NCBI RefSeq assembly: GCF_011386835.1
Contig: NC_088810.1
Location: forward strand, 2,604,001 to 2,668,000
Length of the DNA: 64,000 nt
Source: Chrysemys picta bellii
Lineage: Eukaryota
Direction of reading: 5' to 3'
The position numbers were made by a program, and so were the translations under genes. A model generated the notes under the pieces. It worked only from the letters and a program-made list of their open reading frames with translations. It ran no database searches and was not told where the DNA came from. Shown one piece after another: positions 8,241 through 33,102 of this stretch. Numbering within the stretch: the first letter of the stretch is position 1; every line of letters starts with the position of its first letter.

Positions 8241-9452
8241 TTAGCTTTCCTTGTTGTCATATGGATTTAGCTTCTGTAGGATTCTTTGGGCATCTTCAGT
8301 AGCACGGCTGAGAAAGGTTTTCAGCAGGATATACTTGGTAGCCAATGAAATTCCAAAAGCAACCAAGAGTCCTACCCCTACAACTCCTCCAGACACCATG
8401 AATCCTAGCACCCGTAAAGGCCTCAGAAATAAATCTGCTACTATCAATATGCCACACCCAACCGAGGACAGGAGCTGCAAGACCACGTTAATGCTAATTT
8501 CCTTGGCCAGCAGGGGCTTCATAATGGCCTTCAGCTCTTCCGCTGGTTTGCCAAACTGCCTCGCGAGAGCCATGAAGGAGACATCATCGAGGCCAAAGAC
8601 CTGGCAATAATATCTCATGCATGTCAGCAGGATGGTTACGTCAATAATGGTGGAGACACCGGGTATGTGAATAACCGTGAGAAGAGAGGACGCAAGAGCT
8701 ATTTTCCAGATCTGCTTCTGCAGGGCTTCCTTTTTCTTTTGCAAGATTTGCAGAGAGGAGTTGGGCAGGGCCAGTATCAAAGCCCTTTTCTTGTCGCCCG
8801 GGAGCGCTTTCTCCATGCTCGCTCTCAGGAGGGGAAAATCGTACTTCTCTAATTGAAATGTACAGAGGAGGAAAACCTCAGGATTGATCATCCCTCCCAC
8901 TTCCAGGCATCTGATGCAGTGGTTACGGATGTTGTGCAGTATTTCCTCCTCATCATGGGTGGAGGGCCGGCTATGTCTGTCAGAATCCAAATCTGCCTCC
9001 ACCTTGGAGCGCACAAAGTAACACATCTTCCCTGCCTTCCGGATCTCCTGGGCGAGCTCAACATGCTTAGGTGTGAATCCCTCTGAACACATGATGATGA
9101 CAAAGTCATAGAGGACAAATTTCACCTGCTGGAGATATGCCTCTGGCTGAACATCTTCTGTCCCACTTATCGGCAGTCTCCAGAAAGTCACACTCGGGTG
9201 TTTGGGATGCTGATAAGCTGTTGGCTTCATCATAATTTCTTCCTCCTCAACTGGGGCAGCACCTTCGTCTTCATCACATAGCCCCCGCATGGCGTTAATG
9301 AAGGACGATTTCCCACAGCCTCGCTCTCCCATAATGGCGATATTTAACCTGGTGTATTCCAAAGCCCACTTCTGCATTATAGAAATCATTGTAGGTACTA
9401 ATTGAAATCCAGGAGCAGCCCTTGGTTCTCCCATGTCTTTGGCAGTCTGCCC
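8241..9452 (-). CDS. Terminal coding exon: full-length IRG (IIGP/p47) fold with degenerate GTPase motifs; unit 1
   Basis: 404-codon exon behind acceptor TTTTCAG|GGG (phase 0), internal ATG at 9434. G1 is GERGCGKS, switch I PVEEEEIMM, G3 WRLPISG, G4 SKVEAD. The C-terminal helical region aligns with the + strand IRGs. Confidence 0.92.
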   Translation of the reverse strand, partial: GQTAKDMGEPRAAPGFQLVPTMISIMQKWALEYTRLNIAIMGERGCGKSSFINAMRGLCDEDEGAAPVEEEEIMMKPTAYQHPKHPSVTFWRLPISGTEDVQPEAYLQQVKFVLYDFVIIMCSEGFTPKHVELAQEIRKAGKMCYFVRSKVEADLDSDRHSRPSTHDEEEILHNIRNHCIRCLEVGGMINPEVFLLCTFQLEKYDFPLLRASMEKALPGDKKRALILALPNSSLQILQKKKEALQKQIWKIALASSLLTVIHIPGVSTIIDVTILLTCMRYYCQVFGLDDVSFMALARQFGKPAEELKAIMKPLLAKEISINVVLQLLSSVGCGILIVADLFLRPLRVLGFMVSGGVVGVGLLVAFGISLATKYILLKTFLSRATEDAQRILQKLNPYDNKES

Positions 9453-11262
9453 CTGAAAACACAAAAACCCAGACCAAATATTGATCGTGTATTCTCAAGG
9501 GCAACATTTATAATGTAATCAGCTCACAGAAGAATCACAGAAGGCTCAAAGTGAATTTGCAACAATCTGCAGTTAAATTGAAGAAATTGCTGGTAGGAAG
9601 GAGACTGAGGACATCTTGTCCTTCTTCCCCCACCCCCATAGATGTCAGACCGTCAAAGATCCCTCACCAGGACCCGTGAGAAGTGGTAACACTACCATAA
9701 AGGCATGTGTGCAGCCCCCTTTCTGCAAGGAAGGTGTGAGATGCATTTGCAGAGGATCCTTTCTGAGCGAGCATCCCAGACGCACAACTGGAATCTGAAA
9801 ATCTCTGCCTGTTTTGGGGACCCAGGGCAATTTTGGAGAAGACATTCCAAAGTTACATCTTCACAACTTTCAAATAGCGGGAGCAATTGTCTTCAGAATT
9901 GGCTTGATCTTTAGAGCACCACAAGATCTACCAAACAAGTTAGGTTTGATATTTCTGGCTTCAGTAAGTGGGAGTTAAGTCTGGGCAGAAACTTTCTGAG
10001 TCAAGTGTCTGTGAGCTGGTTACACAGTTTGCAAAATCAGTTTACAGAGCAGTTTGCAAGTGCAGTAGGAAAATTCTGCCCCTCTTTGTGAGCTGTGGCA
10101 CCTGTTGCTGAGAACGTTCAGGGCCAGATCTTCAACTCCTGTTCTGGTTGGAAATCTGCCCTAATAAGGTAGCCAATAGTGGGGAAGTGGGCTGTCTTCT
10201 GGTATGAGGGTCATGTAACGCTGGGCTAACTGGCTCTATGCCCCTCACGTCTGCATAGTGCTCTGGGAAGAGGTATTCTGGAGGTTAGAAGAGGTTGGGG
10301 ACTCATGCTGAACCTCAGCTGCTGGAGCTGTCCCTATGGGACTGCTGCAGATGGCATAATTTAGAGTAACTGTGAGCTTGACTACATATGACAATCAATC
10401 CAGAATAAAGGAGAATGTGAATTTAAAGCAGACTAGCTAGTCTGGATTAACTCCCTACATGAATGCTTTGGAAGTGGATTAAGCTAGCTCCAGATAAAGC
10501 ATTCTTTCTAGGAATAAGAGCATCCACACATGGAGTTAATCAGGAACGGTTAATCAGGAATCATTCCCTGTGTAGTGGCAGGTCTAAACTACAGGGGAAA
10601 GTCGATCTAAGCTACACGATTTGAGTTAGGTTAGTAGCGTAACTCAAATTAATGTGTCTTAGATCTACTTACCACGGGGTCCACTCTCCCGTCGACTCCC
10701 CTTACTCATTTCGTTCTGGTGGAGTACCAGAGTCAACGGGAGAGTGATCGGCAGTTGATTTAACGGGTCTTCACTAGACCCAATAAATCGAAGCCCGGTG
10801 GATCGATTGTCACAGCATCGATCCACCCTGTAGTGTAGACCTGCTCTAGGCAAGCCCTTAATCCACTTTGGACAAAAGAAAAAGGCACTCTCATTCTGGA
10901 ATAGGAATATTCCCTTATGGAGTTATTATGGAATCGTTATTCTGCTTTAAATTCACACATTTACCTTATTCCGGATTAACTTTCATGTGTAAACAAACCT
11001 TAAATAAAGCAAAGGTGAAGTCTCTGCGCCAAGAGGCTTTGAGATGTGACAAAAGAAAGAAAACACGACAGTTTTCAAAACCGCAATCCTGATCTCTTTT
11101 CCCTTTCCACGTTTGCCTGACAAGGGCATCATTTCAAACGGGCAGCAGGGCCTTGAGAAATCCAAAGAGAAAGACCTAGTGACCCAGCCTCCTCCCCTCA
11201 AATCTAATGACCTCAGACACATGTGCAAACAAAGAAGGGAAGCGAAATGTCCGGAGCCGTAC

Positions 11263-11546
11263 CGGGGAGGAATGCGCAGGTGGACTGTGGGTGGGATTGG
11301 CCACTCCTGGCTCCATAGAGGTTGACGAGGATGCCCGGAGCAGATGTTTGTTCTCCTCTTCGTCTTTTTTATGGTCGGACACAGTCTGCTGGGACTCACT
11401 TCGAGGTGACTTTTTGTTCAGCCACAGTTTCCACAAGGAAGGATAATACATTCGAAGGAAAGCGAATGCTAATATCACCAGTAACACTCCCAGACTAATC
11501 CACCACAGACTGCACCATGTTGATGGGCTCTGGAGAAGCTCAGCAT
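11263..11546 (-). CDS. Transmembrane/juxtamembrane exon, unit 1
   Basis: Acceptor TTTTCCAG|AT (phase 1); encodes WCSLWWISLGVLLVILAFAFLR. Candidate donors are CCG|GTACGG (11263, phase 0) and CGAA|GTGAGT (11400, phase 1); unspliced read-through stops at 11176. Confidence 0.75.
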
Positions 11547-11901
11547 CTGGAAAACACAAAATAAACCCAACGGGACGCAGCATGAGAGATGGGATATTCC
11601 CCTGGGGCACGTGGGGAAGGGGTTAGAAATGTCCCACAGACTCCAGCCCGATGGCTCTCAGCATTTCCGTAGCGTGGATCGCAGCTTCCAAGAAAGAGGG
11701 TGTCATGGACACCCTCCCTTCCACAGGCCCCACTCCCCTTCCCATTTGACATCACCAAACCTCACCTCCCACTTCCTGGTTATCGCCTAGACCCCCCGCT
11801 CCCCTGCACAGAGCTCCACTCCCTGCCGCGTGGAGCAGTTTCTAGCAGCCCAGCTGCCCAGACCCTGGGACTTGTGCGGTGCCCTGTGAGAGGAGCCCTA
11901 C

Positions 11902-12252
11902 CCTTCTCCACGGCCACTCTCATCCGCATGGAAAACCTGCCCAGTTGGGGCTTGACGTGGCAGGTGTAGACCCCGTCGTCCGCCAGCTGGACGTTCTTGA
12001 GTCTCAGGGACGCGTTTCCCTCGCAGAATCTCTCCGGATACAGCTGGGTCCGGCCCCGGTAAGCCTCATCCTGTGTTTCCAGTGGGTCCAGCTCAGAGCA
12101 GTAGCTGTGAACCAGGAGATGTGGTCCCTCCTCTTCTTCCTTCTTCCAGGTGATGTTCAGTGGCTGGTGGTTTAACTTGGGTTGGAAGGAGCAATTCAGG
12201 ATGACGTCCTTCCCTGGCTGAACGATGATGGGCCTTTCCGTTTCACTGTCAC
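11902..12252 (-). CDS. IgV exon 2 (B7/butyrophilin-type V-set), unit 1
   Basis: 351 nt, phase 1-1 (CTTTCAG|GT ... AAGG|GTAGGG). Has C...W...YRGRTQL..GNASLRL..DDGVYTC V-set motifs. Confidence 0.92.
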
Positions 12253-13198
12253 CTGAAAGGGAAACAAACATCCAGACAGGAGAGGGGATTAGGGCCCGAG
12301 CCTGGGACGCCAGAGTCCTGACTTAATTCCCTGCTCGACCACAAAACCCCTGGGTGAACTTGGACAAGTCACTACATCGCCCCATACCTCAGTTTCCCCA
12401 TTTGTACAGTGTCAGTAACAGCCCTGTCCTACCAAACGGGCCCTGTGAGGAGAAGTACATTAAACTTTGAGAAACGCCTGGATCCTATGGAAATGGAAGA
12501 GTGATAACTGCCTGCAATCAAATCCTCATTTTCCCCCAAAATTTTTTCACCCGTTTTTTCTGAAATGTAGAAGTTACGTACACAGAACACATCGGTGGGG
12601 GTTGGACTGAACTGGCTCATGGCCCCTTAGACTTTCCCTGGTGCCAGCCTTGTTCAGCTCCAGAATCTAAGAGCTCATTTTAAGAAAATGTCACGCTCCA
12701 GCCTTTATGGTTGTGAAACTTATCCAAAAGAAGAGGTGGCATGATTACCGTGTATAAGGATTTTCACAGGGAGAAAATACCAGGTACTAATGGGCTCCTT
12801 AAGCTAGCAGAGACAAGCAGACCACGAACCAATGGCTGCCGGTATCTGCCGAGAGCCTGAAACAATCTCTTTGAGATGCAGGAGCTGCACTGAGCGTTAC
12901 CCATTTCTCCCCACCACACAAAATCTGCATGGAAAATCATACGGCTACATGGCCTTTTAAGTCGCACTGGGTATGAAAGTGCGGGTCTGCAGGGGAGTTC
13001 TCCTTCCCTTGCCTGGAAGGTAACAGGTAGTACAGAAAGCAGACAAAGTCAAGGCCAGACGAGTGTGGTGTTTTTGGTGGATACACTGTGGCTTTGCAAT
13101 GAGGCACCCATCTGCCCTGCTGGGTGATCACATGGTACACCAGGCCTGGAGTGATTGTCGCGGATGCTATGACCGGGGTACAGGAAGAGGAACCGTAC

Positions 13199-13552
13199 TT
13201 AGCACTATAAGTGAAATCTTCTGGGACCAGCTTCCCAGCTCACAGGTGACGTTGCAGAGGTAGGATCCCTCATCCTGGAGGCGAACGTCGCTGAGTCTCA
13301 GGGATGCATTTCCCTGGGGGAATTTCTGTGGATATAGCTGTGTTCGGCCCCTGTAAGCCTCTTCCTGTCCCTCCAGCCAGTTCATCTTCAGATAGAATCT
13401 GTGAACCAGGAGACCCTGGCCCTGGGCTCCTTCCTTTGTCCAGGTGATGCTCAGTCGATGGAAGCTTATCTTAAATTTGGACGGGAAGATGCAGGTCAGG
13501 GTGACGTCTTTCCCATACTGAGCTGTGATGGCTGTCTCCTCTCCAGCAATGC
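13199..13552 (-). CDS. IgV exon 1 (B7/butyrophilin-type V-set), unit 1
   Basis: 354 nt, phase 1-1 (CCTTTAAG|GC ... CTAA|GTACGG). Translates IAGEETAITAQYGKDVTLTC...ITW...YRGRTQL...DEGSYLC. Confidence 0.92.
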
Positions 13553-14356
13553 CTTAAAGGAAAGCGAAGATCAACATCAGAGTCTTTCATCCTCCAACCT
13601 CCACCATGACCCCCAAATCTTATTCAGAGTCACTGGTCCCCAGGAGAGAGCCCCCCAGCCTGTAAGTTGGGCCAACATACTTTGAATCCTAAGGAGGGAG
13701 CAAAGAAGTGTTAAACTGCTACCTTACTAGTTGGCCACCATCCTAGTTTTACAGCTTTCTGAAGGCCAGATCTTGTATGTCCACCAAACCTCGTCTTTTG
13801 GGGGGTGTAAAGCTAGTTAGAGGAATGCTTTTGGAACAATTTATTGGCTAATGAATAAACAGAGAAAAAATAAATGAAAAGGTGGCATGTTCCAAACTGA
13901 TTAAAGGATGTACTTTTTCGTGGAACAGTGAGCTTGTGGAACTCCCTGCCACATGATGTCATTGAGCCCAGGAGCTTGACAAGATCTAAACAGGGATTGG
14001 GTGGTTAGCTGGATAACAGGGAAAGCCAGAGTTAGAGTAGTTAATGCTAACATACATTTTGGAAGTGAGACTGAACCTCACGCTTAAACCAATCTCGAGT
14101 TATAAAAGATTAGCATGAGACCTCACATGTCGGGCAGACCATCCACAGCTATGGAGATATATATATACTGTGTATATAAGTTTTAAACAAACAGTTCAAT
14201 ACTGTACACAGCAATGAGGATTGTGAAGCTTGGTTGAGGTGGAGGAGTCAGAGGGTGGGATATTTCCCAGGGAGCCTTACTGCTAAATGATGAACTAGCA
14301 CTCGGCTGAGCCCTCAAGGGTTAACACATTGTTATTAATGTAGCCTCACACTCTAC

Positions 14357-14414
14357 AAGGCAGCACAAGAGGCAGGAGACACAAAAGACGCATGGCAGTG
14401 GCTGCAAACATTCC
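14357..14414 (-). CDS. Candidate signal-peptide exon, unit 1 (MRLLCLLPLVLP)
   Basis: Acceptor TTTCCGCAG|, Kozak-like TGCCATG at 14393, hydrophobic peptide. The only in-phase donor (CCTT|GTAGAG) is weak. Confidence 0.5.
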
Positions 14415-14538
14415 CTGCGGAAACTGAACGTGATGATGAACCCAGGTTATCCCACTGGAGCGCACCACTCCCTCCCCTTTCCAAAGTGCCGGGGTGTGTG
14501 TGTGTGTGTGTGTGTGAGCGAGACAGAGAAACAGAGAC

Positions 14539-14871
14539 NNNNNNNNNNNNNNNNNNNNNNNNNNNNNNNNNNNNNNNNNNNNNNNNNNNNNNNNNNNNNN
14601 NNNNNNNNNNNNNNNNNNNNNNNNNNNNNNNNNNNNNNNNNNNNNNNNNNNNNNNNNNNNNNNNNNNNNNNNNNNNNNNNNNNGTGTGAGTGTGTGCGTG
14701 AGACAGNNNNNNNNNNNNNNNNNNNNNNNNNNNNNNNNNNNNNNNNNNNNNNNNNNNNNNNNNNNNNNNNNNNNNNNNNNNNNNNNNNNNNNNNNNNNNN
14801 NNNNNNNNNNNNNNNNNNNNNNNNNNNNNNNNNNNNNNNNNNNNNNNNNNNNNNNNNNNNNNNNNNNNNNN
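14539..14871. other. Assembly gaps (N runs 14539-14683 and 14707-14871) within a TG/AG microsatellite tract
   Basis: Seen directly in the sequence. Confidence 0.98.
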
Positions 14872-16048
14872 TTTACGTACGCTGACCCCACTCTAAGTAC
14901 ATTGCCTTTTTAAGTAGATCAGCAAGTTGAGACAGCAGCTGCTGCCAGCATGCTCCCTCCGTCCTGAGCCCCGTCGTGCCCCCCACTGCTCCGTGTAGAT
15001 GGGGTACAGGAGTGGGGGGCAGGAGCGGGGGGAGAGGGACACCCTGACATCAGCCCTCCTCTTCCCCCCCGCCCCGCACAGCAAGCAGGAGGCTCCGGGG
15101 AGCAGCTCCAAGGCAGAGGGCAGGAGCAGCACATGGCAGTGGGGGGAGGGACACCTGAACTGCCGGCAGTCGATAGCCTGCTGGGCAGCTGCCGCACAGG
15201 GAACTCAGGGGAGCTGATAGGGGGGGCTGCTGGTCCACCCTGGCTCCAAGCCCCCCCCCCGCCCCCCCAGCTCCAGCAGGCTGCTCTTAAAGCAGGCGGC
15301 TGCCAAAGGACGTTAGAAGGGAGCACTGCACAACTTTAAACGAGCCTGTTCCCTAATTGATCAGCGACGTAACCACGAAACATCGTTAACCGGGACGCCG
15401 TTCAGTGAGGGGTTACTGTAATAACGCACAGCACTGAGCCCAATGGGGCCTTGGCCAGGACTGGGGTTCTTGTGTGTTACCGTGATACACCTAATAAACA
15501 GCAATCAGAATGGACAGCACCGAGCAAAGTGGGGGCCTGGGTTGTGACGGGGCTCCGGGGCACTGAAGTCGTTATCACCAAAGGCGAGCAGAGCTGGAAT
15601 ACTTACAGCAGAGAGTCCACAGCACAATCGAGTGAAGTGAGCAAACGAGACTGACTCTCATCATGGTGCGGAGCAGCCTGCGTCTGCAAGCGAAGGCGGG
15701 ACGGTCTCTGAAGGGCTGGCTCCTGCCCCAGGCGAGCCGCTGAACGTCAGGAATGAAGGCACCGGGCGCGATTCTCCTCTCGCTCACCCCAGTAGCGCTC
15801 AGGTGTAACGCCGGGCTGGTTCCGATCTCTCATCTCCTATGTCATTTAATAGCCAAGAAAGCAAAGCGATTGCAGACGTATTTGGCAGGGTGCTGTGGAA
15901 ATGCTTTTAACAAATGCAGACCTGGTTTCTCACTAATGCTCACACCTCTTTTGCTGGGTGTAAATTACATTCAATGCAATTCCGTAGCAGGAATCCAATT
16001 CTCTGACATCCCAGGGGAAGCCGAAATGAAGCCCCAGCCCCTCTAGAG

Positions 16049-16443
16049 CAGCGGCTCTCAACCTTCCCAGACTACTGTTGTTCCCCTTGCAGGAGTCTGA
16101 TTTGTCTTGCGTACCCCCAAGGTTCACCTCACTTGAAAACGACTTGCTCACAAAATGAGACATAAAAGTACAAGTGTCACAGACGCACTACTCCTGCCAA
16201 AGTGTTTCCTTTCTCATTGTTCCCATATAATTATAACATAAATCGATTGGGATATAAATATTGTACTTGCATTTCAGTGGACAGTCTATAGAGCAGTGTA
16301 AACAAGTCGTATGAAATTTCAGTTTGCACTGACTTCGCCAGTGCTTTTTATGTGGCCTGTTGTAAAACTAGGCAAATATCTAACTGAGTTGATGTACCCC
16401 TGCGAGACCCCCAGGGGACGTGTACCCCGGTTGAGAACCACTG
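16049..16443. mobile_element. hAT-type MITE
   Basis: Termini CAGCGGCTCTCAACC...GGTTGAGAACCACTG; 8-bp TSD CTCTAGAG/GTCTAGAG. Confidence 0.82.
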
Positions 16444-16801
16444 GTCTAGAGAAAGGGGATTGTTTTCTATTACAAATAGAAAATGGGGGAGGGTGTTTCT
16501 GTCCTGGGAACTGAGGGCTTGTGCCTCTCCCAGAGAACGTGTCTTCCTGGTCAGACTGGAGAGCCTCCCCCATGGCCACGTGCTGCCCGGGGTCCTGCAA
16601 AGGGTGGCCTCACCCTGGCTAACTCGATGGCCCGTGTGGAGCGTTGATAGCAGAGCCCAGCTCTGTGCCATTATTCATCGGTATGTGGCGTTCAGGACAC
16701 CTAAAATGGCTGCTAGTCAGCAGCAGCTATAGTGCCTCTTTGGCCTTCCAACAACCAGCCCCCCGACAAAACAAGACCCAAAGCCAAGAAAGGCCACTTA
16801 C

Positions 16802-16915
16802 CGGCTTCCCTCCCGGGAGCCCCAGGTGCGCCCACTCAGCAAAGAGCTTACAGAACCGGAGTGATTTGTGTTCGGTTTCCCATCTCTCTCCTGTCTCTCC
16901 CACTGACGCCGAGCA
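16802..16915 (-). other. Putative non-coding exon 1, unit 1
   Basis: Strong donor GCCG|GTAAGT ~127 nt downstream of an ISRE; the 5' end is approximate. Confidence 0.55.
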
Positions 16916-16928
16916 GGGTGAATAATCT

Positions 16929-16941
16929 GGAAAGTGAAAGC
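16929..16941 (-). promoter_or_regulatory. ISRE/IRF element, unit 1 promoter
   Basis: GGAAAGTGAAAGC (+) = GCTTTCACTTTCC (-), matching the GAAANNGAAA consensus. Confidence 0.7.
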
Positions 16942-22162: not shown

Positions 22163-22857
22163 TCAGCCAGCCAAACGACTCCCCAATTCTTGCTGTAATA
22201 TTTCCTCTAGGAGAGGAAAGTCGTGCCGGCCATATTCAAAGTTAGACAGGAGAAAGACCTGTGGGGAAGTCACCCCTTCTCTCTGCAAGTCTTTCACGCA
22301 AGTGTCTCTGATTCTCTGCAGAATTTGCTCTTCATTATAGGTAGAAGGCCGATTCCTCCGGGCAGCAAGCAAGTTCCTGTCGACCTTGGAGCGCACAAAA
22401 TAAACCTTCTTCCCTGCTCGCTGGATCTTCCGGGCCAGGCCAGTGTGGGTGGCTGTGAAGTGACGGGAGGAGAAGATGAGGAATACATCGTATTGGCTCA
22501 AACTGAAGAGATCGTGGTCCATGTCTGATTGACGTGTCATCAACCCGAACCCCGGCAGGTCCCATATGGTAACATTGGGTTGTTTGGGAAGCTGATAAGA
22601 AGTTGGTACCATTGTCGTTTCCACCACCCCGGTTTTAGCAGCACCTTCCTCTTCATCACCCAGGCCTCTAATGACATTGACAAAGGATGATTTCCCAGCA
22701 CCCGTCTGCCCCAGGAGAGCGACGCTTCGCATGGTGTTTTGTGATGACCCCCCATCCTCCTGCCATGCAGAATCTGCTTCAGAAAGGTCACTTGTGTCAG
22801 AAGTAAATGTGTAGCTCCAGGAATCGGCACTATCCCCGTCAGAGTCCAGCCTCTGGC
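22163..22857 (-). CDS. Terminal coding exon: acidic linker plus IRG G domain, C-terminal helical domain missing; unit 2
   Basis: Acceptor TTTTCCTTTTCCAAG|GC (phase 1); open for 41 codons before ATG 22732. G1 GQTGAGKS, switch I KTGVVETTM, G3 WDLPG, G4 SKVD. Stops after QELGSRLAG. Confidence 0.88.
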
Positions 22858-22955
22858 CTTGGAAAAGGAAAAGAAACGTTTCAATTACAGTTGGCTTTAA
22901 AAGTCCCTGTTAAACATGAAACTTTCAACTCTTATTTCAGCCTTCAGTGACATTC

Positions 22956-23516
22956 TGTAGAGGGCTGGCTCGGCTGTTCCCCACGCATGGCTGGGACGCG
23001 GCTGTGGGCTGCCAATTCATAATTCCCCGGGGGGCATTGCCAGCCTCTGTCATTTACAACATCCAGTACATGCCCATATCTGTACCTGCCCCTACCTGAA
23101 GCTGTTGGCTTGTTCTCCAGAATCGTGGTGTGACGGGGTAGATTAGGCCCTGAGGCCCCCTGCTGGAGGGACCCCTGATGGGTCCTGCCACACCCTGCCC
23201 CAGAAAAAAGAGCAGTAGAGAGGTCCTCCAAGCAGGCTAAGCAGGCTAGAGTGGCTGCAGGGGAAGCAGCCAATCAGGGGCCAGGAGGGCCATATAAAAG
23301 GAGCTGCAGAACAGCGCAGCAGGCAGGTGCTGTGTGGAGCTCAAGGAGTGAAGACTGGGTGACTGGCTGGCTGGCAGAGTAGCAATTCATAGTGAAGACT
23401 GTGTGTGACTTGGCTGGAGGGCTGAGTCACCGAAGAGCCACCAAAAACAAAGAAGAGAGTGAAGGCACATGCACTCAGCCAGGGGGCGCTCACGAGGGGT
23501 GAGTCATCCTGTTACA
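22956..23516 (+). mobile_element. Solo LTR with CCAAT and TATA boxes
   Basis: TGTAG...GTTACA ends; CCAAT at 23270, TATAAAA at 23293, and a GGGTGAGT donor near the 3' end. Confidence 0.6.
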
Positions 23517-24976
23517 CGCGGCTTTCCTTTTCCTTTTTTAAAGTAATTCTCTAGCTGTTACACTTGTGAAAACAACATCAAAATAATGAGCCGAGGGTAA
23601 CGGATGGAGAGATGAGTCTACAGACAGCCTGGGACAACAGATGTCAGAGGAGGGACTTCCCACGTGTAACTGATGGAGCAACACCTGCCTGAGTCTGCAG
23701 AGAGCCTGAGACCATTGCTGGCCTAGCAGTGAGCTGCAGGTCAGGATCGAGGAGCACTGGAAGAGCTGTGGAGGGAGCCCAGAGCTGGGGCAGTAGCGGG
23801 GCTGCAGGTCAGGACTGAGCCTCATTGGCAGAGCCGTGAGGGTGGAGAGCTAAGGGCTGGGGTGGCAGGGGGGCTGCAGGTCAGGACTGAGCTGTGTCTC
23901 TGCCTTTTCTAGTGTCTCCTTCCCTTGCCTTCCGCACCCACAAGTTTGATTTACACATGGAAGTGACATTTTACCATAGATCATACCCTATCCACAGCCC
24001 AGTGTGGCTGGGAGCCAGGAGACAGCATGTGTGTGTGGGGGACACAGAGGCATTTCCCTTCCCAGCCACTAACAGACCCACTTGATGCTTTTCTCTCAGC
24101 TCCAGGCTCTGTGGGGAAAGCCGTTTTCAGCATTCTGAGCTCCCCTGGGGCTGCCTGCTTTGCTGAGGCATTCGCTCCCAGCTGCAATGCCGTGGTACCC
24201 TGGGGGGACAACACATTTACTAATAGATCCAGGACCAGAACCTGGTCTCCGGGTGTCTCCTGCCTGTTCAGCTGGATGGGATGGTCGGGAATCGGGGCCT
24301 GTAGCAGAGCTGGTCTCTGAGCGCAGCCATCCTGGAGTACGCTCCTACTTGGCCACCCCGCCCGATTAGCTGGAAGGCTCAACAGACCAGCTCTGCTTAA
24401 AGATGTGACTAAGCAATTACATGCAGAATGAAGCCACTTTCCGCTTGCTGGGAGCCGGCTTGGTGGCTTCATGGCACCTGCTTGTTCCTAGCCCTGCTCC
24501 AGCCTGGCTCCTCTCCAGGGAACCTGCCTCGACCCGCAGCCCCAGGCCCTGATTTCTGACGGGGAGTAACACACAAGCACACCAGCCCCAGAACTTGTAT
24601 TAGAGTCCAAACATGGATCGGGGCCCCATGTAGCACTGGGCACTGCCACCCCCTGACCGAAATCAGGGCTGCATATCAAGATCCGGGGTCCCGGGGCGCT
24701 GGGTGCTGCACAAACCCAGTGAGACATTCCCCTGCCCCTAAGAGCGTCTGATCTATTTAACATCTTCATTCTGATCTGGAAGAGGGGAGCAATTTGTTAG
24801 TTACATGCCTAGATACGAAATTGGGAAGAAGGCAAACACGTGTGAGAAATAATCCACAGAGAGCTAGAGAGTTAAGAAATAATGAGAGGTCTATGAAATA
24901 AACATGCCTAACTCATTCTTTTGAACTGGTTTTCCTTCTTCTGTGAAAATAGCGCTGCTTACAAGTGGGACTTTAC

Positions 24977-25097
24977 CTGTTTTGCTAGGCTTCTGGGCAA
25001 TATTTCTGGGATCCTTTTCCTTTGCAGGAGATTTTCCACGGGAGAATTTTGGCTGTTCAGGCTTCTCCCATGCGTGTCTTTCATCCCAGGCTGGCGT
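24977..25097 (-). CDS. Cytoplasmic linker exon, unit 2 (TPAWDERHAWEKPEQPKFSRGKSPAKEKDPRNIAQKPSKT)
   Basis: 121 nt, acceptor GAATCTTTTCTAG|, donor CAG|GTAAAG. Phase 0 in and phase 1 out, matching both flanking exons, with no stop. Confidence 0.78.
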
Positions 25098-26329
25098 CTA
25101 GAAAAGATTCACATTGGAGTGAATAGAAAGGGTGAGTTTACACGGCAATCGGCACGACTCTGATTGCACTCGCTTGTTAAAAATACTGGCGTGGCTGCAG
25201 GCGGCGGCTCAGGCTAGCTGCCCCAGGACGTGTCTAGGATCTCGGACGGGACTGTACAGGGGACCACTGCTTGGGTCTCCGTGGCCCCACTGCTAGGGGC
25301 TAGCTGGATCGGAGCTGGCATGTGCACCTCTGCCCACGCCAGCCCCCGCCCATGGTCTCTTCACCTCAGCTTCACTCCTCTGACTCCATTCCCCTCAGCA
25401 CCCCTATCCCCCCTTGTCCCTTCCTTGGTGCTAACGAAACACACCTCGTTTGCAGCCATCCCATCGCTCGTGCGTTCTCCCCCTTCCCAACCATGTCTGA
25501 CTGGCCTATTTAAACAATAGTCTTTAATTGTTTCCTTGCCCTCCCCCATCCATCTGGCTGTCTCCAGCTGGTGTCTCTTGTACATAGACTAGAAGCTCTT
25601 CGCAGCAGGGACTCTCTTTGTTCTGTGTTTGTGCAGCACCTAGCGCGCTGGGGTTCAGGGTCAGGATGGAGTGCCTGGGCACTACCATGATACGCCTAAT
25701 AAAGGGCACTAATAATTTACAGCGCCCAGCACAGTGGGGCCCTGCACCAGGATATGGGCATGTGGGTGCTACCGTAATGCACCTAATTAAGGGCAGTAAT
25801 AATGTACAGTACCTAGCACAGTGGGGTCCCAGGCCGGGTTAGGGGTGCTACTGTAATGCACCAAATAAACAATAGGTTTTTATTATTAGGAGTTAGACCT
25901 GATGACCTTTGCAGTCCCTTTTAACCCTATGGGTCTACGATTCCATTATTATTATTATTATTTATTATTTATTATCACAACATTTCAATTTTCTGCTGCA
26001 ATTTTCTAAACAAAATAAAATTCAATTCAAACTGAATATTTTCATTCTCAAAATGTTGATTTGTTTCCCTTTTTTTTAATTTTCAGGGAGTGGGTTTTCC
26101 CCCCTTTTTTGGCGCCCCCCATTTTTGGCATTGGATAAAGGCAAGGAAAGGTTTTTCAGCTAGAAGCCCGGTCGGCCCAGTGGCTAATCTGCTACTGATC
26201 TTGACAGATCAAAAGGAATTGATCACAGAACTAAAAATGCGTGGCTCTTTTAGATGCAAGTGGTCATGACTTGATCACATTTGTCGTGTGCAATGAGAAT
26301 AAAGTCCCAACCAGTAATATAGATACAGG

Positions 26330-27325
26330 GTGTTTTAATTATGTATCAGCTGGCAGAAAGAATGTAAAGAGAAAACGGTGAATGATAATTGGGAATGGTT
26401 TAAGAACATTTTACTAGATGCCCAGAAAACCACAATCCCAGATGAGAAAGAGTTTAAAAAACCAGCCTACTTAGAGAGGAAATGAAAACCACTTCAAACA
26501 ATAATATATAACAATTGGAAGAAACGGGAAGTTGATAGCAATGAATATAAATTAGATGTACATCAGAAGCAGGAAGCCTGCTAAACAACCAGTGGGGCCC
26601 CTGGACGATCGAGATACAAAAGGAGCGCTTAAAGACGATAAAGTCATTGCAGAGAAACTAAATGGATTCTTTGCTTCAGTCTTCACGTCTGAGGATGTTA
26701 GGGAGATTCCCAAACCTGTCGTCCTTTGTAGGTTGAAGTGTCTTTAGAAGAGGCTTTAGAATTGATACACTTAACATTAACAAGTCACCGGGACCAGATG
26801 GCATTCACCCAAGAGTTCTGAAAGAACTCAAATGTGAAATTGCAGGACTATTAACTATGGTTTGTAACCTGTTCTTCAAATCAGCTTCTGTACCCAATGA
26901 CTGGAAGATAGCTAATGTAACGTCAATATTTAAAAAGGACTCCAGAGGTGATCCTGGTAATTACAGACCGGTAAGTCTAACGTCAGTACCGGCCAAATTA
27001 GTTGAAACAACAGTCAACCTGGGGAACTCCTTGCCTGAGGAGGTTGTGAAGGCTAGGAATATAGCAGGGTTTAAAAGAGAACTAGATAAATTCATGGAGA
27101 TTAAGTCCATTAATGGCTACTAGCCAGGCTGGGTAAGGAATGGTGTCCCTAGCCTCTGTTTGTCAGAGGGTGGATATGGATGGCAGGAGAGAGATCACTT
27201 GATCATTACCTGTTAGGTTCACTCCCTCTGGAGCACTTGGCATTGGCCACTGTTGGCAAACAGGATACTGGGCTGGATGGACCTTCAGTCTGACCCAATA
27301 TGGCCATTCTTATGTTCTTATGTTA
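26330..27325 (+). mobile_element. CR1 LINE fragment (RT remnant plus 3' UTR, internally deleted)
   Basis: ORF 26857-27123 contains DWKIANVTSIFKK..GDPGNYRPVSLTSVP, the CR1 RT N-terminal motif, followed by a CR1 3' UTR. Confidence 0.9.
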
Positions 27326-27987
27326 AGCTAGGCATTGTAGAAAATTGATGAGGAAAGCAAATGGACACAAAGAGAAATATATGGCCTCCAGAATTAGAAG
27401 ATCACTTACATGGGGAATAAATACCTACATGGGAAATAGAAAATTGATAACAGACGGCTCTTCAGTCGAGCAGAAAAAGGAAGCAAGACAAACTCAGACT
27501 GGAAATAAGGTTTAACCGTGAGAGTAATTAATCATTGGAACAAATTACCAGGGGTTGTGATGAATTCTCCATCACTGGCAATTTTAAAATCAAGACTGGA
27601 TGTTTTTCTAAAGGATCTGATTGGGGCAGTTCTCTGGTCTGCGTTATCCAGGAGGTCAGACCAGATGATCAGAGTGGTCTCTTCTGGCTGGAATCTATGC
27701 ATTTCTGAGCAATTATAAACTCCTCACAGTCCATCCAGGGGCCGGGTAACTGCACCCTGACATTCGGGGTCAGAAAACAATCAACCTTAAAAATTCTGGT
27801 GGAGAAGGGGAGGCAGGGAATTTTTTTTCTTCGTGTCTGGAGATCGCTGAGTGCAAATGTAATTAAACAGAGGGATTTCAAACAGGCAAAAGAAAAATGC
27901 TCAAAGCAGCGTAAACCCTCCCCACATCTGTAATGAAGATGCCTCCCCACAGACGCGCCAAGGAGAGAAAAATGTTTTGAAACTCAC

Positions 27988-28226
27988 CTGCCGGGACTCT
28001 AGAGTCTGTTTGGTATCATCCACTCTTAAGTCCCACAAGAAATAGGCTTCCGGCTGCGCTCTTCCCTCCTCATAGTCAGCCTCCAATCCAAAGGCGTGTT
28101 TGGATGGCCTCAGTTTCCATCGGCCGGGAAGACGACGCATTTTAATGATGATAAGCATTACCAACAGGGAAAGAGGAAGAAGTAGAAGAGGAAGAGGTGC
28201 CCAATAGAACCAGACACACCTGGCAC
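27988..28226 (-). CDS. Transmembrane/juxtamembrane exon, unit 2
   Basis: Acceptor TTTCTTACAG|GT (phase 1); encodes WFYWAPLPLLLLPLSLLVMLIIIKMRR; consensus donor CAG|GTGAGT (phase 0). Confidence 0.85.
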
Positions 28227-28975
28227 CTGTAAGAAATGTGGGAGGGGAAGAAAAATCCACAAAACCCAGAATGCTTCTGTGAGCGCAGCAGGGTCCCAGG
28301 AAACCCCCGCTCTCCCCCCCAAGAGGTGCTGGGAATTGCAGACACCTTTCCCACTGCCACGAGCCCAGGGGATCTCAAATATTGTCAGAGCTGCACAGAG
28401 AGATCATACCTCTCCTCCCATTTGCCTGTAGGGTTCCCTCCTTTCTAATTGCTGGTAACCAGACCCGCGAGGAGACCACGCCCCCTTCTTCATCTCTTCC
28501 CAAGGCCCCACCCCATTGCTTGCTCCTCTCCCCACATCTCTCACTGGATCGTCTCATGGGACCTGCCAGCAGGTAGGAGGTGGCCTTGGTCGAGCAGGGG
28601 CTGGTGCGGGGTAATGACCCAGTGCCTCCGTCCACCCCGTGGTAACCGGACTTTTGGTTTGGGTGCCATTGAGGGTTGCCAGGTCCCAGAAAATCACCCA
28701 GACAGAGAAGCCAAAAACAAGACTGCCTGGATAAAAACAAGACAGTTGGCAACCCTATTTGTCTGTGCTTGGCCCCTCTCACTCCTTCCCCTTTGCTACC
28801 ACTGAGATTCACCAGCGATCACCTGGGCTCCCATCTACCATCTCGCTGAGCCATCCAGCTCTGCTCCCCAGTGGGTTACGGTGATGTGAGAACCCACCGC
28901 CGCGTGGAGCTGTTCCTAGCGGCCCAGCTGCCCGGACCCTGGGACTCGTGCGGTGCCCTGTGAGAGGAGCCCTAC

Positions 28976-29326
28976 CCTTCTCCACGGTCACTCTCATCCG
29001 CACGGAAAATGTGCCCAGTTGTGGCTTGACGTGGCAGGTGTAGACCCCGTCATCCGCCAGCTGGACGTTCTTGAGTCTCAGGGACGCAATTCCCTCGTGG
29101 AATCTCTCCGGATACAGCTGGGTCCGGCCCCGGTAAGCCTTATTCTGTCTCAGCCTCTGGTCCCTCCCCTTATAGTACGTGTGAACCAGGAGATCCCGTC
29201 CCTCCGCTGTTTCCTTCTTCCAGGTGATGTTCAACAGCTGCAGGTTTCGCTCAGGTTCGAAGGAGCAGCTGAGAGTGATGTCCTCCCCTTCCTGAACTAC
29301 AATGGGCGACTCTCGTTGTCTTGCCC
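28976..29326 (-). CDS. IgV exon 2, unit 2
   Basis: 351 nt, phase 1-1 (CTCTTTAAG|GG ... AAGG|GTAGGG); close paralog of 11902-12252. Confidence 0.92.
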
Positions 29327-29838
29327 CTTAAAGAGAAAAATCAATATTTTTTGTTGAGTTTTTCAAACATCAAGCAGTGGCCCATGCACTCATGACATGC
29401 ATACGCTGTAGTCTAAAAAGTACCCACAACACAGCCTGCACCCGTTTTCCATTTCACCCCAAAATCTGTAACTGCAAAACCTGAGTGGATTAGCAGAAGG
29501 GGAGATGGTGGTTAATACTGGAGCTAGTGATGGAGGGTGTCAGAGAAGCTTTGGTATCAAAGCCATGGATGCACCAAGACGGCATGAGGGGATTTCCAAA
29601 GGGATTCAGGTGCCTACAGATGCAGAGAGGTGCTTTTGAGAATCCCTCTACGTGCCTAACTCCCTCGACTTCTATGGGAATTAAGCAACAAAAAATGGAA
29701 AAAAAAAATTGGTGTGTGTGTGTGACAATTTGCATTTAGTTGAAAAGCTGTTTTCCTCCCAACAAATGTTTGAACGGCATCTTTTCGACCAGCTGTAGCC
29801 TCAGAGGCCAGCAAAGCCCATTGTAGGAGGTGTCATAC

Positions 29839-30183
29839 TCAGCACTGTCAGCGATGTCTCCTCAGACCGCGGGCCCAGCTCAGAGTTGACGAAGCAGCTG
29901 TAAGACCCCTCGTCCTCAATGTGAACATCCCTCAGTCTCAGGGACGCGTCCCCTTTGGCGAATCCTTCTGGGTCCAGCTGCGTCCGCCCCCTGTAAGCCT
30001 CAGATTGTTTCTCCATTCCCAAAGAGTAGCTGTGGACCAGCAGATCTGGTCCATCGGCTCTTGGCTTCTTCCAGGTGACGTTCACTTGTTGATTTGCTGC
30101 CAAGCCGAGTGTGGAAAAGGTGCAGCTCAGGGTGACGTCCTCGCCGCACTGAGCTGTGATGGATAACTGTGACATGATCACCC
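29839..30183 (-). CDS. IgV exon 1, unit 2
   Basis: 345 nt, phase 1-1 (CCTTTCAG|GG ... CTGA|GTATGA); ITAQCGEDVTLSC...VTW...YRGRTQL...DEGSYSC. Confidence 0.92.
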
Positions 30184-31516: not shown

Positions 31517-31618
31517 CAGAATGTCGAGTTCAACAAAACTCAGGCTTCTGAAAACCAGGAAATACTGAGTTAAGGTCAACACCCATTTAACCTTAACTCT
31601 GGCCCCTGGAGTTGACAT
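31517..31618 (-). CDS. Candidate leader exon, unit 2 (MSTPGARVKVKWVLTLTQYFLVFRSLSFVELDIL)
   Basis: TGCCATG start and strong donor CTG|GTAAGG, but phase 0. It needs a 0-to-1 micro-exon; the candidate 30666-30708 has only a weak donor. Confidence 0.45.
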
Positions 31619-32784: not shown

Positions 32785-33102
32785 GTTTAGATACATACTG
32801 GGGATTTGGGGCTTCTTCCCCCTCCCTTCCACCGAGCCACAAAAGTCTTCCCCCATCTCCACATGTTGCTAGGCATCATCATCCCCCAAAGGTCGGGGTC
32901 CCCCTGACTAAATCCACAGGGCACGTGAAGCTGTTACAGCCGTGACCCCGTTAGAGCAGCAGAGATCGGTTCTGTGCAGAGCCATTAACGTGCAGTTCAG
33001 TGTTTAGCAGCCATGTTCGAGGTGCCTTAGCAGGCCTTAGAAACATATTTTGGAGAAAATCCCAGCAACAAAACAGCCCCACCTGGGAGGGGAATCTCTT
33101 AC

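What the first reader, a model, noticed from the sequence alone, without database searches (positions are those of the whole stretch)
8241..16941. Second IgV-IgV-TM cassette spliceable in frame to a full-length IRG (unit 1)
Seen: the same order and strand recur (ISRE, exon 1, leader candidate, IgV, IgV, TM, IRG). Two in-frame routes exist. One is TM donor CCG|GTACGG (11263, phase 0) direct to the IRG acceptor at 9452 (phase 0), giving ~733 codons from IgV1. The other is the stronger CGAA|GTGAGT donor (11400, phase 1) through a 38-nt candidate exon (10999-11036, phase 1 to 0). The IRG exon is open for 6 codons before its ATG. Inference: repetition of the architecture suggests an old, duplicated fusion-gene family rather than chance adjacency. 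Support is weaker than for unit 2 because the TM exon could also read through to a stop at 11176.
Basis: partly seen in the sequence, partly recalled or inferred. Interest (0 to 1): 0.8.

Follow-up and report, generated by a model that had tools for sequence, protein, structure and literature searches.

The report
Turtle B7-like receptor fused to IRG
This stretch of painted-turtle DNA is one gene encoding a membrane protein with two antibody-like domains outside and an interferon-type IRG GTPase-like domain inside, an architecture shared by all major turtle lineages, annotated only as "uncharacterized", and not found in the papers searched.

Summary
On the minus strand, five coding exons join in frame into a 752-codon ORF: leader 15664-15607, IgV 13552-13199, IgV 12252-11902, TM/tail 11546-11263, IRG 9452-8241. 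The ORF is 100% identical to RefSeq XP_065429709.1, "uncharacterized protein LOC101946653" of Chrysemys picta bellii.

Gene models from at least ten other turtle species use the same junction, including a side-necked turtle and a trionychian. Route 2 (38-nt exon) is in frame, but its donor GT exists only in Chrysemys.

The N runs lie in intron 1 and touch no reading frame.

The IRG part is not canonical:
- It lacks the N-terminal helices.
- It keeps the P-loop.
- It has lost the switch-I threonines and the DxxG motif, making it a membrane-tethered "quasi-IRG".

Unit 2 belongs to a second old subtype that carries only a canonical G domain. Trees of the Ig parts and the IRG parts give the same subfamilies, which indicates duplication of an already fused gene.

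I could obtain no direct transcript evidence, and function is inferred. No paper describing this architecture was found.

The parts
16930..16940 (.). ISRE core GAAAGTGAAAG, read as CTTTCACTTTC on the gene strand, about 1.27 kb upstream of the leader ATG.
   Evidence: 8 ISRE-type matches against 1.2 expected. GCTTTCACTTTCCAGA is the only TTTCNNTTTC-type element in the 3 kb upstream of the leader in Chrysemys, Carettochelys, Pangshura and Mauremys. It lies at -1.2 to -1.44 kb. The same core sits 1.33 kb upstream of the leader of unit 2, at 33230.
16802..16929 (-). Candidate non-coding exon 1. The start is unknown. It ends at the donor CCG|GTAAGT, with GT at 16801-16800.
   Evidence: the donator GG|GTAAGTGGC and a second ISRE-like half site (GGGAAACCGAACA) are conserved in the type A orthologues. 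This is an inference; no transcript data were available.
15607..15664 (-). Leader (signal peptide) exon, coding part, from ATG 15664. Phase 0 to 1.
   Evidence: It forms residues 1-20 of P0265. Hydrophobic core at residues 3-21.
14539..14871 (.). Two N runs (14539-14683 and 14707-14871) inside intron 1.
   Evidence: these are the only N runs in the window, and they are intronic. Intron 1 is gap-free and 1.9-5.7 kb long in four other turtles.
13199..13552 (-). IgV1 exon, 354 nt, phase 1-1.
   Evidence: Pfam V-set E 2e-14. AF2 pLDDT is about 90 or higher. Omega 0.48, P=0.009 against 1.
11902..12252 (-). IgV2 exon, 351 nt, phase 1-1.
   Evidence: Pfam V-set E 1e-17. Best solved relatives are CD276/B7-H3 and VTCN1/B7-H4. 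Omega 0.31, P=4e-6.
11263..11546 (-). Exon of 284 nt (phase 1 to 0) holding the stalk, the TM helix and the cytoplasmic tail. It ends at the donor CCG|GTACGG.
   Evidence: The donor GT is conserved in 7 species. TM helix at residues 262-288. The internal GTGAGT at 11399 is read through as codons in all models.
9453..11262 (-). Intron 4, 1810 nt. It contains the read-through stop TAG 11178-11176 and the rejected 38-nt candidate exon 11036-10999.
   Evidence: The read-through peptides differ in length and stop position between species. The intron alignment carries indels that are not multiples of three. The gene strand has no AATAAA or ATTAAA. The mini-exon donor GT is present only in Chrysemys.
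8241..9452 (-). IRG exon, 1212 nt, phase 0, stop TAA at 8243-8241. It encodes the last part of the tether and a quasi-IRG domain.
   Evidence: Pfam IIGP E 8e-78, covering profile positions 30-374 only. Aligns to Irga6 from residue 52. AF2/Foldseek TM 0.72-0.77 to IRG structures. The frame is open in 7 species, against 0 of 2000 neutral simulations.

Best explanation
Unit 1 is a single gene, RefSeq LOC101946653 of the painted turtle.

Gene structure:
- A conserved ISRE and probably a short non-coding first exon come first.
- Five coding exons follow on the minus strand and are spliced into a 752-aa type I membrane protein.

Protein, from N to C terminus:
- a signal peptide;
- two B7-H3/B7-H4-like IgV domains, extracellular or lumenal, with five N-glycosylation sequons;
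- one TM helix;
- a disordered cytoplasmic tether of about 65 residues;
- an IRG fold consisting of a G domain plus a C-terminal helical domain.

The TM/tail exon is joined to the IRG exon by CCG|GTACGG (11263) to cag|GGG (9452), in phase 0. The junction falls in the middle of the tether.

The IRG module lacks the first 35 or so residues of a canonical IRG. It keeps the P-loop (GERGCGKS). It has lost the switch-I threonines and the G3 DxxG motif (WRLPI) in every orthologue, and here also the G4 aspartate (SKVE). It is therefore most likely a nucleotide-binding or nucleotide-free scaffold that does not hydrolyse GTP: a permanently membrane-anchored quasi-IRG.

The fusion predates the split of side-necked and hidden-necked turtles. 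The fused gene then duplicated as a unit into type A (this gene) and type B (unit 2), whose IRG part is a bare G domain with canonical GTPase motifs.

What is shown: the gene structure, the domain content, the conservation and the motif states.

What is inferred:
- interferon induction through the ISRE;
- the membrane topology;
- the function. My proposal is that the protein is an interferon-induced membrane-resident partner or regulator of catalytically competent IRGs. Partners could include its type B neighbour, through G-domain contacts. The ectodomain would give it a butyrophilin-like ability to couple an outside or lumenal ligand to the cytosolic IRG system.
For: Structure:
- The spliced ORF is 100% identical over 752 aa to XP_065429709.1.
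- The same five-exon structure, the same donor GT and the same acceptor are found in Carettochelys, Pangshura and Mauremys.
- The junction is conserved in Chelonia, Chelydra and Emydura.
- The PAHSSP|GQTAKD junction appears in models from several sources: NCBI RefSeq records and UniProt, Chelonia mydas, Chelydra and Pangshura records.
- The internal ATG at 9434 is replaced in Chelonia (AGG), Chelydra (ATA) and Emydura (ACG), whereas GQTAKD upstream of it is kept.
- The IIGP match starts at profile position 30, so an IRG-only product would be N-terminally truncated.
- Intron 4 has no AATAAA or ATTAAA on the gene strand.

Selection:
- Ig exons have omega 0.31-0.48, significantly below 1.
- The IRG exon is open in 7 species, against 0 of 2000 simulations.

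Domains:
- Pfam.
- PDB sequence matches to Irga6 and to CD276.
- AF2 mean pLDDT 79.9. Both Ig domains and the IRG part are mostly 85 or higher; the tether at 299-364 is below 50.
- Foldseek TM 0.72-0.77 to GM4951, Irga6 and Irgb10.
- Hydropathy and glycosylation sequons.

Motifs.

Family history:
- The Ig tree and the IRG tree are congruent.
- The AU test does not reject a single origin of all fused IRG domains (P=0.30).
- Tandem synteny of the subtypes.

ISRE conservation.
Against: - I could not reach any transcript evidence. A search for short junction-spanning proteins from assembled reads found nothing.
- All support for the junction comes from gene models plus comparative sequence. Homology-based pipelines can propagate one model to other species.
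- The average omega of the tail (1.14) and of the IRG exon (0.85, P=0.085) is not significantly below 1. Constraint on the amino-acid sequence of the cytoplasmic part is therefore weak or is mixed with diversifying selection.
- Trachemys has an IRG-only RefSeq model of 403 aa starting at the internal Met.
- ATG 9434 has a good Kozak context.
- A weak ISRE-like GAAAGGGAAAAG lies in intron 4 of five species.
- Two draft assemblies show a frameshift: Chelonia in the IRG C-terminus and Emydura in IgV2.
- The functional proposal is an analogy, not a test.
Confidence: 0.85

Rival explanations
1. There are two separate genes. The first is a CD276-like IgV-IgV-TM gene that reads through the 11263 donor to the stop at 11176 and ends there. 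The second is an independent IRG gene translated from ATG 9434. The fusion would then be an annotation artefact or only a minor isoform.
For: - The Trachemys RefSeq model XP_034612442.1 is IRG-only.
- The Kozak context gccaaagacATGG is good.
- A weak ISRE-like element is conserved in intron 4.
- In Mauremys reevesii the unit-2 equivalent is annotated as separate Ig-only and IIGP-only genes.
- Turtle 'CD276 antigen-like' Ig-only models exist.
Against: - ATG 9434 is not conserved in three species, while the six codons before it are.
- The frame opens essentially at the acceptor.
- The product would lack the N-terminal IRG helices.
- Read-through peptides differ in length and stop position, and the intron has non-triplet indels.
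- Intron 4 has no canonical poly(A) hexamer.
- The donor GT is conserved in 7 species.
- Ig-only models nest inside fused subfamilies in the Ig tree.
Confidence: 0.07
2. Route 2: the strong donor CGAA|GTGAGT at 11400 is used, together with the 38-nt exon 11036-10999, before the IRG exon.
For: The route is in frame and open, giving 719 aa. GTGAGT is close to the donor consensus.
Against: - The mini-exon donor GT exists only in Chrysemys. Five species read AAGGGCTT there, and in Carettochelys the region cannot be aligned.
- The 138 nt after 11400 are kept open in six species, with a 9-nt in-frame indel in two of them.
- These 138 nt are included in every gene model.
Confidence: 0.02
3. The IRG part is a decaying passenger. 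A B7-like gene captured a dying IRG exon, and the cytoplasmic part has no function of its own.
For: - Omega of the tail and the IRG is not significantly below 1.
- The GTPase motifs are degenerate.
- Small deletions occur around switch II in Pangshura and Chelonia.
- The Chelonia draft has a frameshift.
Against: - The 403-codon frame is open in all seven species examined, against 0 of 2000 neutral simulations.
- 171 of 417 columns are invariant.
- AF2 predicts a confident complete IRG fold.
- The same motif losses are shared by all orthologues, so they are old and stable rather than progressive.
- Standalone IRG paralogues in the window also run at dN/dS of about 0.5.
Confidence: 0.05

Closest known systems
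Mouse tandem IRGs (Irgb2-b1, Irgb5-b4) and zebrafish irgg-irgq1 (Bekpen et al. 2005, PMC1297648)
   Same: An IRG coding exon without an autonomous start is spliced in frame to an upstream gene. A canonical but truncated IRG unit is paired with a 'quasi' unit whose nucleotide-binding motifs are modified. The turtle type B plus type A pair, and the Carettochelys 990-aa model that carries both, parallel this arrangement.
   Different: Here the upstream partner is not another IRG. It is a signal peptide, two IgV domains and a transmembrane helix. That paper mentions no transmembrane or immunoglobulin partner (0 occurrences of either word).
Butyrophilins (BTN/BTNL)
   Same: They are type I membrane proteins with a B7-family ectodomain and a cytosolic innate-immunity recognition domain. 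Skate and shark butyrophilins are among the nearest non-turtle relatives of the Ig part, at 33-35% identity.
   Different: The butyrophilin ectodomain is IgV-IgC and its cytosolic domain is B30.2. Here the ectodomain is IgV-IgV and the cytosolic domain is an IRG fold. The comparison concerns how it works, not membership.
CD276 (B7-H3) and VTCN1 (B7-H4)
   Same: These are the best solved-structure sequence matches of the ectodomain: CD276 E 5e-30 over both domains, VTCN1 E 2e-18. NCBI names the Ig-only turtle relatives 'CD276 antigen-like'.
   Different: CD276 and VTCN1 have V-C units and short cytoplasmic tails with no GTPase domain.
Canonical GKS IRGs such as Irga6 (PDB 1TQ4, 5FPH)
   Same: The fold is the same (Foldseek TM 0.71-0.74), sequence identity is about 30%, and the P-loop is GX4GKS.
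   Different: Relative to the Irga6 alignment, there is no N-terminal myristoylation region and the first helices are missing. T102 is Val, T108 is Met, D126 is Arg, G129 is Ile and D186 is Glu. The protein is anchored by a TM helix rather than recruited to membranes.

Membership tests
IRG / p47 GTPases (Pfam PF05049 IIGP) | Significant match to the IIGP domain | tested here: met
   E 8e-78, 262.6 bits against a cut-off of 24. The match covers profile positions 30-374 of 375 only.
IRG / p47 GTPases (Pfam PF05049 IIGP) | G1 P-loop GX4GKS (or GMS) | tested here: met
   GERGCGKS in the window. GxxxCGKS in all 12 type A proteins.
IRG / p47 GTPases (Pfam PF05049 IIGP) | G3 DxxG (WDLPG) | tested here: not met
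   WRLPI in the window. The Asp and Gly are lost in all 12 type A proteins. All type B and standalone IRGs examined keep WDLPG or a close variant.
IRG / p47 GTPases (Pfam PF05049 IIGP) | G4 (N/T/S)KxD | tested here: not met
   SKVE in this window. SKVD or AKVD in the other 11 type A proteins.
IRG / p47 GTPases (Pfam PF05049 IIGP) | Switch-I threonines (Irga6 T102 and T108) | tested here: not met
   Val and Met at the aligned positions. E106 is retained.
IRG / p47 GTPases (Pfam PF05049 IIGP) | G domain plus helical domain fold | tested here: met
   The AF2 IRG part has pLDDT mostly 85 or higher. Foldseek TM to target is 0.72-0.77 over about 390 residues of GM4951, Irga6 and Irgb10. This is a prediction, not a solved structure.
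IRG / p47 GTPases (Pfam PF05049 IIGP) | GTP binding and cooperative hydrolysis | not testable with these tools
   A biochemical assay is needed. The motif states predict loss of hydrolysis.
IRG / p47 GTPases (Pfam PF05049 IIGP) | Interferon-responsive promoter (ISRE/GAS) and induction | tested here: inconclusive
   An ISRE motif is present and conserved in four species. Induction itself cannot be tested here.
Quasi-IRG (IRGQ class of Bekpen et al. 2005) | IRG homologue with a modified nucleotide-binding site and doubtful GTPase function | tested here: inconclusive
   Switch I, G3 and (here) G4 are modified, but the P-loop is intact. The definition is taken from PMC1297648. Orthology to IRGQ was not examined, because no IRGQ sequence was included in the tree.
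B7 / butyrophilin family | B7-type IgV domain | tested here: met
   V-set E 2e-14 and 1e-17. The nearest solved relatives are CD276, VTCN1, PD-L1 and MOG.
B7 / butyrophilin family | IgV-IgC ectodomain unit | tested here: not met
   Both domains score best as V-set. The best structural matches of the pair are V-V receptors, JAML and CD226.
B7 / butyrophilin family | Type I membrane topology (signal peptide plus a single TM) | tested here: met
   Hydrophobic leader at residues 3-21 and TM at 262-291, followed by basic residues. Five of the six N-x-S/T sequons are in the ectodomain. AF2 predicts a helix at 262-288.
Butyrophilins specifically | Cytoplasmic B30.2 (PRY/SPRY) domain | tested here: not met
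   No SPRY or PRY hit. The cytoplasmic domain is IIGP.

The most novel reading that the evidence does not exclude
Turtles carry an ancient multigene family, predating the split of the two living turtle suborders, of B7-like transmembrane receptors whose cytoplasmic module is an IRG. The family comes in complementary, tandemly arranged subtypes: a GTPase-dead full-fold type A, and type B, a bare G domain with canonical GTPase motifs. Together these would form a previously undescribed direct link between extracellular or lumenal recognition and the IRG cell-autonomous defence system. The link would be analogous to butyrophilin/B30.2 inside-out signalling and to the IRGM-type regulator versus effector division of labour.
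Probability: 0.3. Interest if true: 0.8.

Novelty: new variant of a known kind. Interest (0 to 1): 0.64.

Why it matters
To my knowledge, IRGs are described as cytosolic or peripherally membrane-bound GTPases that are recruited to pathogen vacuoles. A version hard-wired to a membrane through a B7-like receptor would be a new way of deploying this defence module. It would also be a second example, after butyrophilins, of a B7 ectodomain coupled to an intracellular innate-immunity domain.

The family is old, multi-copy and apparently restricted to turtles among the sequences I could reach. The type A/type B pairing gives a natural system for asking how catalytically dead IRG units regulate live ones.

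It also shows that database entries named "uncharacterized protein", "interferon-inducible GTPase 5-like" and "CD276 antigen-like" in turtle genomes belong to one family.

Tried and rejected
1. Direct transcript evidence. I searched the 5.8-billion-protein collection, which includes proteins from assembled sequencing runs, with the junction-spanning piece P0265:295-420. This gave no hits. The first search returned no read-assembly proteins above about 49% identity. P0265 is recorded on the genome contig only.

2. Ig-IRG fusions outside turtles.
- The exhaustive representative search listed 150 proteins. I scanned 20 N-terminally extended ones with Pfam. Only the Pangshura orthologue had Ig domains; the rest were tandem IRGs, one RING-B-box-IRG from Danio aesculapii, or had no Pfam hit in their N-terminal extension.
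- The Ig-part search reached fish at 23-35% identity but found Ig+IIGP only in turtles.
- Absence elsewhere is therefore likely but not proven.

3. Route 2 is rejected on conservation.

4. A single origin of all fused IRG domains. The backbone of the G-domain tree is unresolved, and the AU test neither rejects nor proves it. The congruence of the Ig and IRG subfamilies is the better argument.

5. Purifying selection on the cytoplasmic part. This is not demonstrable from average omega. Maintenance of the ORF had to carry the argument.

6. Literature. Seven full-text searches found no description of an Ig/TM-IRG fusion.

7. I did not fetch the same locus from the public Chrysemys assembly, so as not to see the letters under the N runs. 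As a result, the RefSeq annotation of unit 2 in this species was not checked.

8. P0002 (Gopherus isoform X2) could not be located on a contig.

Full report
**What is there**

The window is an IRG gene cluster. It holds three standalone IRG ORFs on the plus strand (41541-42875, 48581-49834, 62176-63474) and two composite units on the minus strand.

In the finding's interval the minus strand carries these features:
- a leader exon from ATG 15664 to 15607, with donor TGCT|GTAAGT;
- two phase 1-1 exons of 354 and 351 nt (13552-13199 and 12252-11902);
- an exon 11546-11263 encoding a hydrophobic helix and a tail, ending at CCG|GTACGG;
- after a 1810-nt intron, an exon opening at ttttcag|GGG (9452) that runs to TAA at 8241.

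Pfam calls both middle exons V-set immunoglobulin domains (E 2e-14 and 1e-17). It calls the last exon an IIGP (IRG) domain (E 8e-78). These include the six open codons before ATG 9434, the in-frame 38-nt candidate exon and the read-through stop at 11178-11176.

**The assembly gap**

The only N runs in the window (14539-14683 and 14707-14871) lie in intron 1. They are 735 nt below the leader donor and 986 nt above the IgV1 acceptor, so no reading frame crosses them. What depends on the scaffold being correct across the gap is only the link of the leader, and of the ISRE and exon 1 above it, to the rest of the gene. In Carettochelys, Pangshura, Mauremys and Chelonia the same two exons are separated by a gap-free intron of 1.9-5.7 kb. 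The estimated 2054 nt in the window is therefore unremarkable. I did not look up the letters.

**Which splice route**

Joining the five exons by route 1 gives a 2259-nt open frame of 752 codons. A protein search with the IRG ORF returned turtle gene models carrying both Ig and IIGP domains. A cluster look-up showed that XP_065429709.1, [quoted passage not shown], is 752 aa. My spliced translation is identical to it at every residue. The window is thus painted-turtle DNA, and route 1 is the current RefSeq model.

The same ...PAHSSP|GQTAKD... junction is present in models from Gopherus, Chelonoidis, Chelonia, Chelydra, Emydura, Emys, Mauremys, Pangshura and Carettochelys. These records come from several sources besides RefSeq, for example UniProt, Chelonia mydas, Chelydra and Pangshura entries.

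I fetched six orthologous loci.
- The five-exon structure is the same in Carettochelys, Pangshura and Mauremys.
- The donor is G|GTACGG in five species, GTATGG in Chelonia and GTACAG in Carettochelys. The acceptor is conserved throughout.

Three further observations argue that the IRG exon is an internal coding exon rather than a gene of its own.
- The frame opens only four codons above the acceptor.
- GQTAKD is kept in nearly all species, whereas the ATG that follows it is AGG in Chelonia, ATA in Chelydra and ACG in Emydura.
- The IIGP match starts only at profile position 30, corresponding to about Irga6 residue 36-52. An IRG-only product would therefore lack the N-terminal helices.

Past the donor, the read-through peptides are 20, 28 and 42 residues long in three species. 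The alignment shows 1-nt and 4-nt indels, as expected for an intron. The gene strand of intron 4 has no AATAAA or ATTAAA.

Route 2 fails on conservation. The donor GT of the 38-nt exon is created by a Chrysemys-specific change: five other species read AAGGGCTT there, and in Carettochelys the region cannot be aligned. The 138 nt after the GTGAGT at 11400 stay open in six species, with a 9-nt in-frame indel in two of them.

**Is the ORF maintained by selection?**

Codon models on 5-7 species gave these values:

| Part | omega | P against omega = 1 |
|---|---|---|
| IgV1 | 0.48 | 0.009 |
| IgV2 | 0.31 | 4e-6 |
| TM/tail exon | 1.14 | not significant |
| IRG exon | 0.85 | 0.085 |

The cytoplasmic half therefore evolves fast. 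However, simulating unconstrained substitution along the same tree left the 403-codon IRG frame open in all seven species in 0 of 2000 runs. On average 6.6 of 7 tips acquired a stop. In addition, 171 of 417 columns are invariant, and the three standalone IRG paralogues of the window also run at dN/dS of about 0.5. I read this as a functional, rapidly evolving immune gene and not a decaying one. Site-model tests are still needed.

**The protein**

Hydropathy shows a leader (residues 3-21) and a TM segment (262-291) followed by basic residues. Five of the six N-glycosylation sequons are in the Ig part.

AlphaFold2, run on a 74-sequence alignment, gave mean pLDDT 79.9. It predicts:
- two confident Ig domains;
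- a helix at 262-288;
- a disordered tether at 299-364 that contains the exon junction (residues 346/347);
- a confident IRG fold at 367-750.

Foldseek matches the IRG part to GM4951, Irga6, Irgb10 and Irgb6 (TM 0.65-0.77). It matches the Ig pair to V-V receptors and to B7-H3. By sequence, the ectodomain is closest to CD276/B7-H3 (E 5e-30) and VTCN1/B7-H4.

Against Irga6, the P-loop is intact (GERGCGKS). T102 is Val, T108 is Met, the G3 motif WDLPG is WRLPI, and G4 SKVD is SKVE. Across 12 type A proteins the switch-I and G3 losses are universal, while SKVE is specific to this Chrysemys gene. This is the profile of a non-hydrolysing "quasi" IRG in the sense of Bekpen et al. 2005 (PMC1297648), although the P-loop is preserved.

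**The family**

A search with the N-terminal 345 residues found two groups of Ig+IIGP proteins, all from turtles:
- type A, the orthologues of unit 1;
- type B, with 50-57% identity in the Ig part.

All 13 type B models end at canonical IRG residue about 268-299, so they carry a G domain only. Their G1, G3 and G4 motifs are canonical.

Unit 2 of this window is one of them. Its exons are leader 31893-31840, IgV 30205-29840, IgV 29324-28974, TM 28290-27985, a small exon 25097-24972, and a G-domain exon 22861-22166. They map at 62-95% identity, lowest in the TM exon, onto the Gopherus and Platysternon models; the Trachemys model matches at 95%, but only in the last two exons.

In the G-domain tree type A is one clade (100/99). 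Type B forms three well-supported groups. The backbone is unresolved, and an AU test does not reject a single origin of all fused domains (P=0.30).

The Ig-part tree recovers the same groups with the same membership. The five Ig-only "CD276 antigen-like" turtle models nest inside type B groups. Congruent Ig and IRG histories are what duplication of an already fused unit predicts. Each group contains a trionychian, and type A also contains the pleurodire Emydura. By the accepted turtle phylogeny, the type A fusion therefore predates the split of the two living suborders, and the subfamilies predate the cryptodiran radiation.

The tandem order, with type B upstream of type A on the same strand, is seen in Chrysemys and Carettochelys. 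In Mauremys, Ig-only and IIGP-only models occupy the same upstream position.

**Promoter**

The ISRE core GAAAGTGAAAG occurs four times in the window (8 ISRE-type matches against 1.2 expected). One copy lies 1.27 kb above the leader of unit 1 and another 1.33 kb above the leader of unit 2. In Carettochelys, Pangshura and Mauremys the same GCTTTCACTTTCCAGA is the only such element within 3 kb upstream. About 130 nt downstream of it lies a conserved GG|GTAAGTGGC donor. A non-coding first exon behind an interferon-responsive promoter is the classical IRG gene layout. Here it remains an inference.

**How it most likely works**

Shown: a conserved gene for a type I membrane protein with a B7-like IgV-IgV ectodomain, a flexible tether and a cytosolic IRG fold that has an intact P-loop but degenerate catalytic motifs.

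Inferred, in order of confidence:
- The gene is interferon-induced.
- The IRG module sits on the cytosolic face of the membrane that carries the protein.
- Being unable to hydrolyse GTP, the IRG module acts as a membrane-resident partner, regulator or decoy for catalytically competent IRGs. These may include its G-domain-only type B neighbour. From general knowledge of the field, this resembles membrane-bound IRGM regulators and the Irgb2-b1 tandem; irgg-irgq1 is described.
- The ectodomain may couple ligand binding to that cytosolic function, as in butyrophilins.

**Novelty**

The gene is already in RefSeq, but as "uncharacterized". Its relatives are named inconsistently. Seven full-text searches found no description of an immunoglobulin/transmembrane-IRG fusion. 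The reference survey of vertebrate IRGs contains neither "transmembrane" nor "immunoglobulin". I rate it a new variant of known kinds (IRG and B7/butyrophilin).

**Limits**
- I had no transcript data.
- Gene models can be propagated between species by homology.
- Restriction of the family to turtles rests on searches of limited sensitivity.

Noticed in passing
window 22166-33240 (minus strand): Unit 2 is a six-coding-exon type B gene: leader 31893-31840, IgV 30205-29840, IgV 29324-28974, TM about 28290-27985, a small exon 25097-24972, and an IRG exon 22861-22166. The IRG exon stops right after the G domain (...LGSRLAG*) and has canonical G1, G3 and G4 motifs. This truncation is shared by all 13 type B models from other turtles, so it is a family trait and not a local defect. 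An identical ISRE core lies at 33230.
   Followed up: partly
P0273 (Carettochelys insculpta XP_074837591.1, 990 aa): One gene model carries Ig-Ig-TM, then a canonical G-only IRG domain, then a second full-length IRG with GELGSGRSS and WELPP motifs (quasi). The second IRG is sister to the type A clade. It may preserve or mimic an ancestral tandem arrangement, or it may be a read-through model.
   Followed up: partly
P0158 (Danio aesculapii XP_056305067.1, 525 aa): A RING plus B-box plus IIGP protein. The IRG domain sits where TRIM proteins carry B30.2. This parallels the turtle case, where the IRG sits where butyrophilins carry B30.2.
   Followed up: no
window 41541-42875, 48581-49834, 62176-63474 (plus strand): The three standalone IRG paralogues (pairwise dN/dS about 0.5) begin with a variable number of roughly 11-residue repeats (MKGMESVSxL...). 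The third has a P-loop Gly-to-Arg change (GETGARKS).
   Followed up: no
window 30516-30526 and 52905-52915: Two further copies of the exact ISRE core GAAAGTGAAAG. One lies in intron 1 of unit 2. The other lies between the second and third plus-strand IRG genes.
   Followed up: no
window 11096-11107 (intron 4, gene strand): A weak ISRE-like GAAAGGGAAAAG lies about 155 nt after the TM donor. It is conserved in five of seven turtles. It could mark an internal promoter for an IRG-only transcript.
   Followed up: partly
window 8957-8968 (codons for SKVE): The G4 aspartate is Glu only in this Chrysemys gene. The other 11 type A proteins, including the second Chrysemys paralogue P0267 (LOC101936008, outside the window), keep the aspartate (SKVD or AKVD).
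   Followed up: partly
L002 15423-15425 (Chelonia mydas draft); L001 about 10010 (Emydura): There are apparent 1-nt frameshifts in the IRG C-terminus (Chelonia) and in IgV2 (Emydura). They could be assembly errors in draft genomes or lineage-specific decay.
   Followed up: no
P0278 (Trachemys scripta elegans XP model, 605 aa) against window unit 2: Its last two exons match unit 2 at 95%, but its Ig part matches at only 57-62% and falls outside the B2 group in the Ig tree. It is either a chimeric model or the result of recombination between paralogues.
   Followed up: no
window 35796-36272, 38940-40052, 55685-56260 (minus strand): There are two near-identical ORFs of unknown nature at 35796-36272 and 55685-56260. 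A pair of ORFs at 38940-40052 may derive from a retroelement, judged by eye only. All lie between the IRG genes.
   Followed up: no
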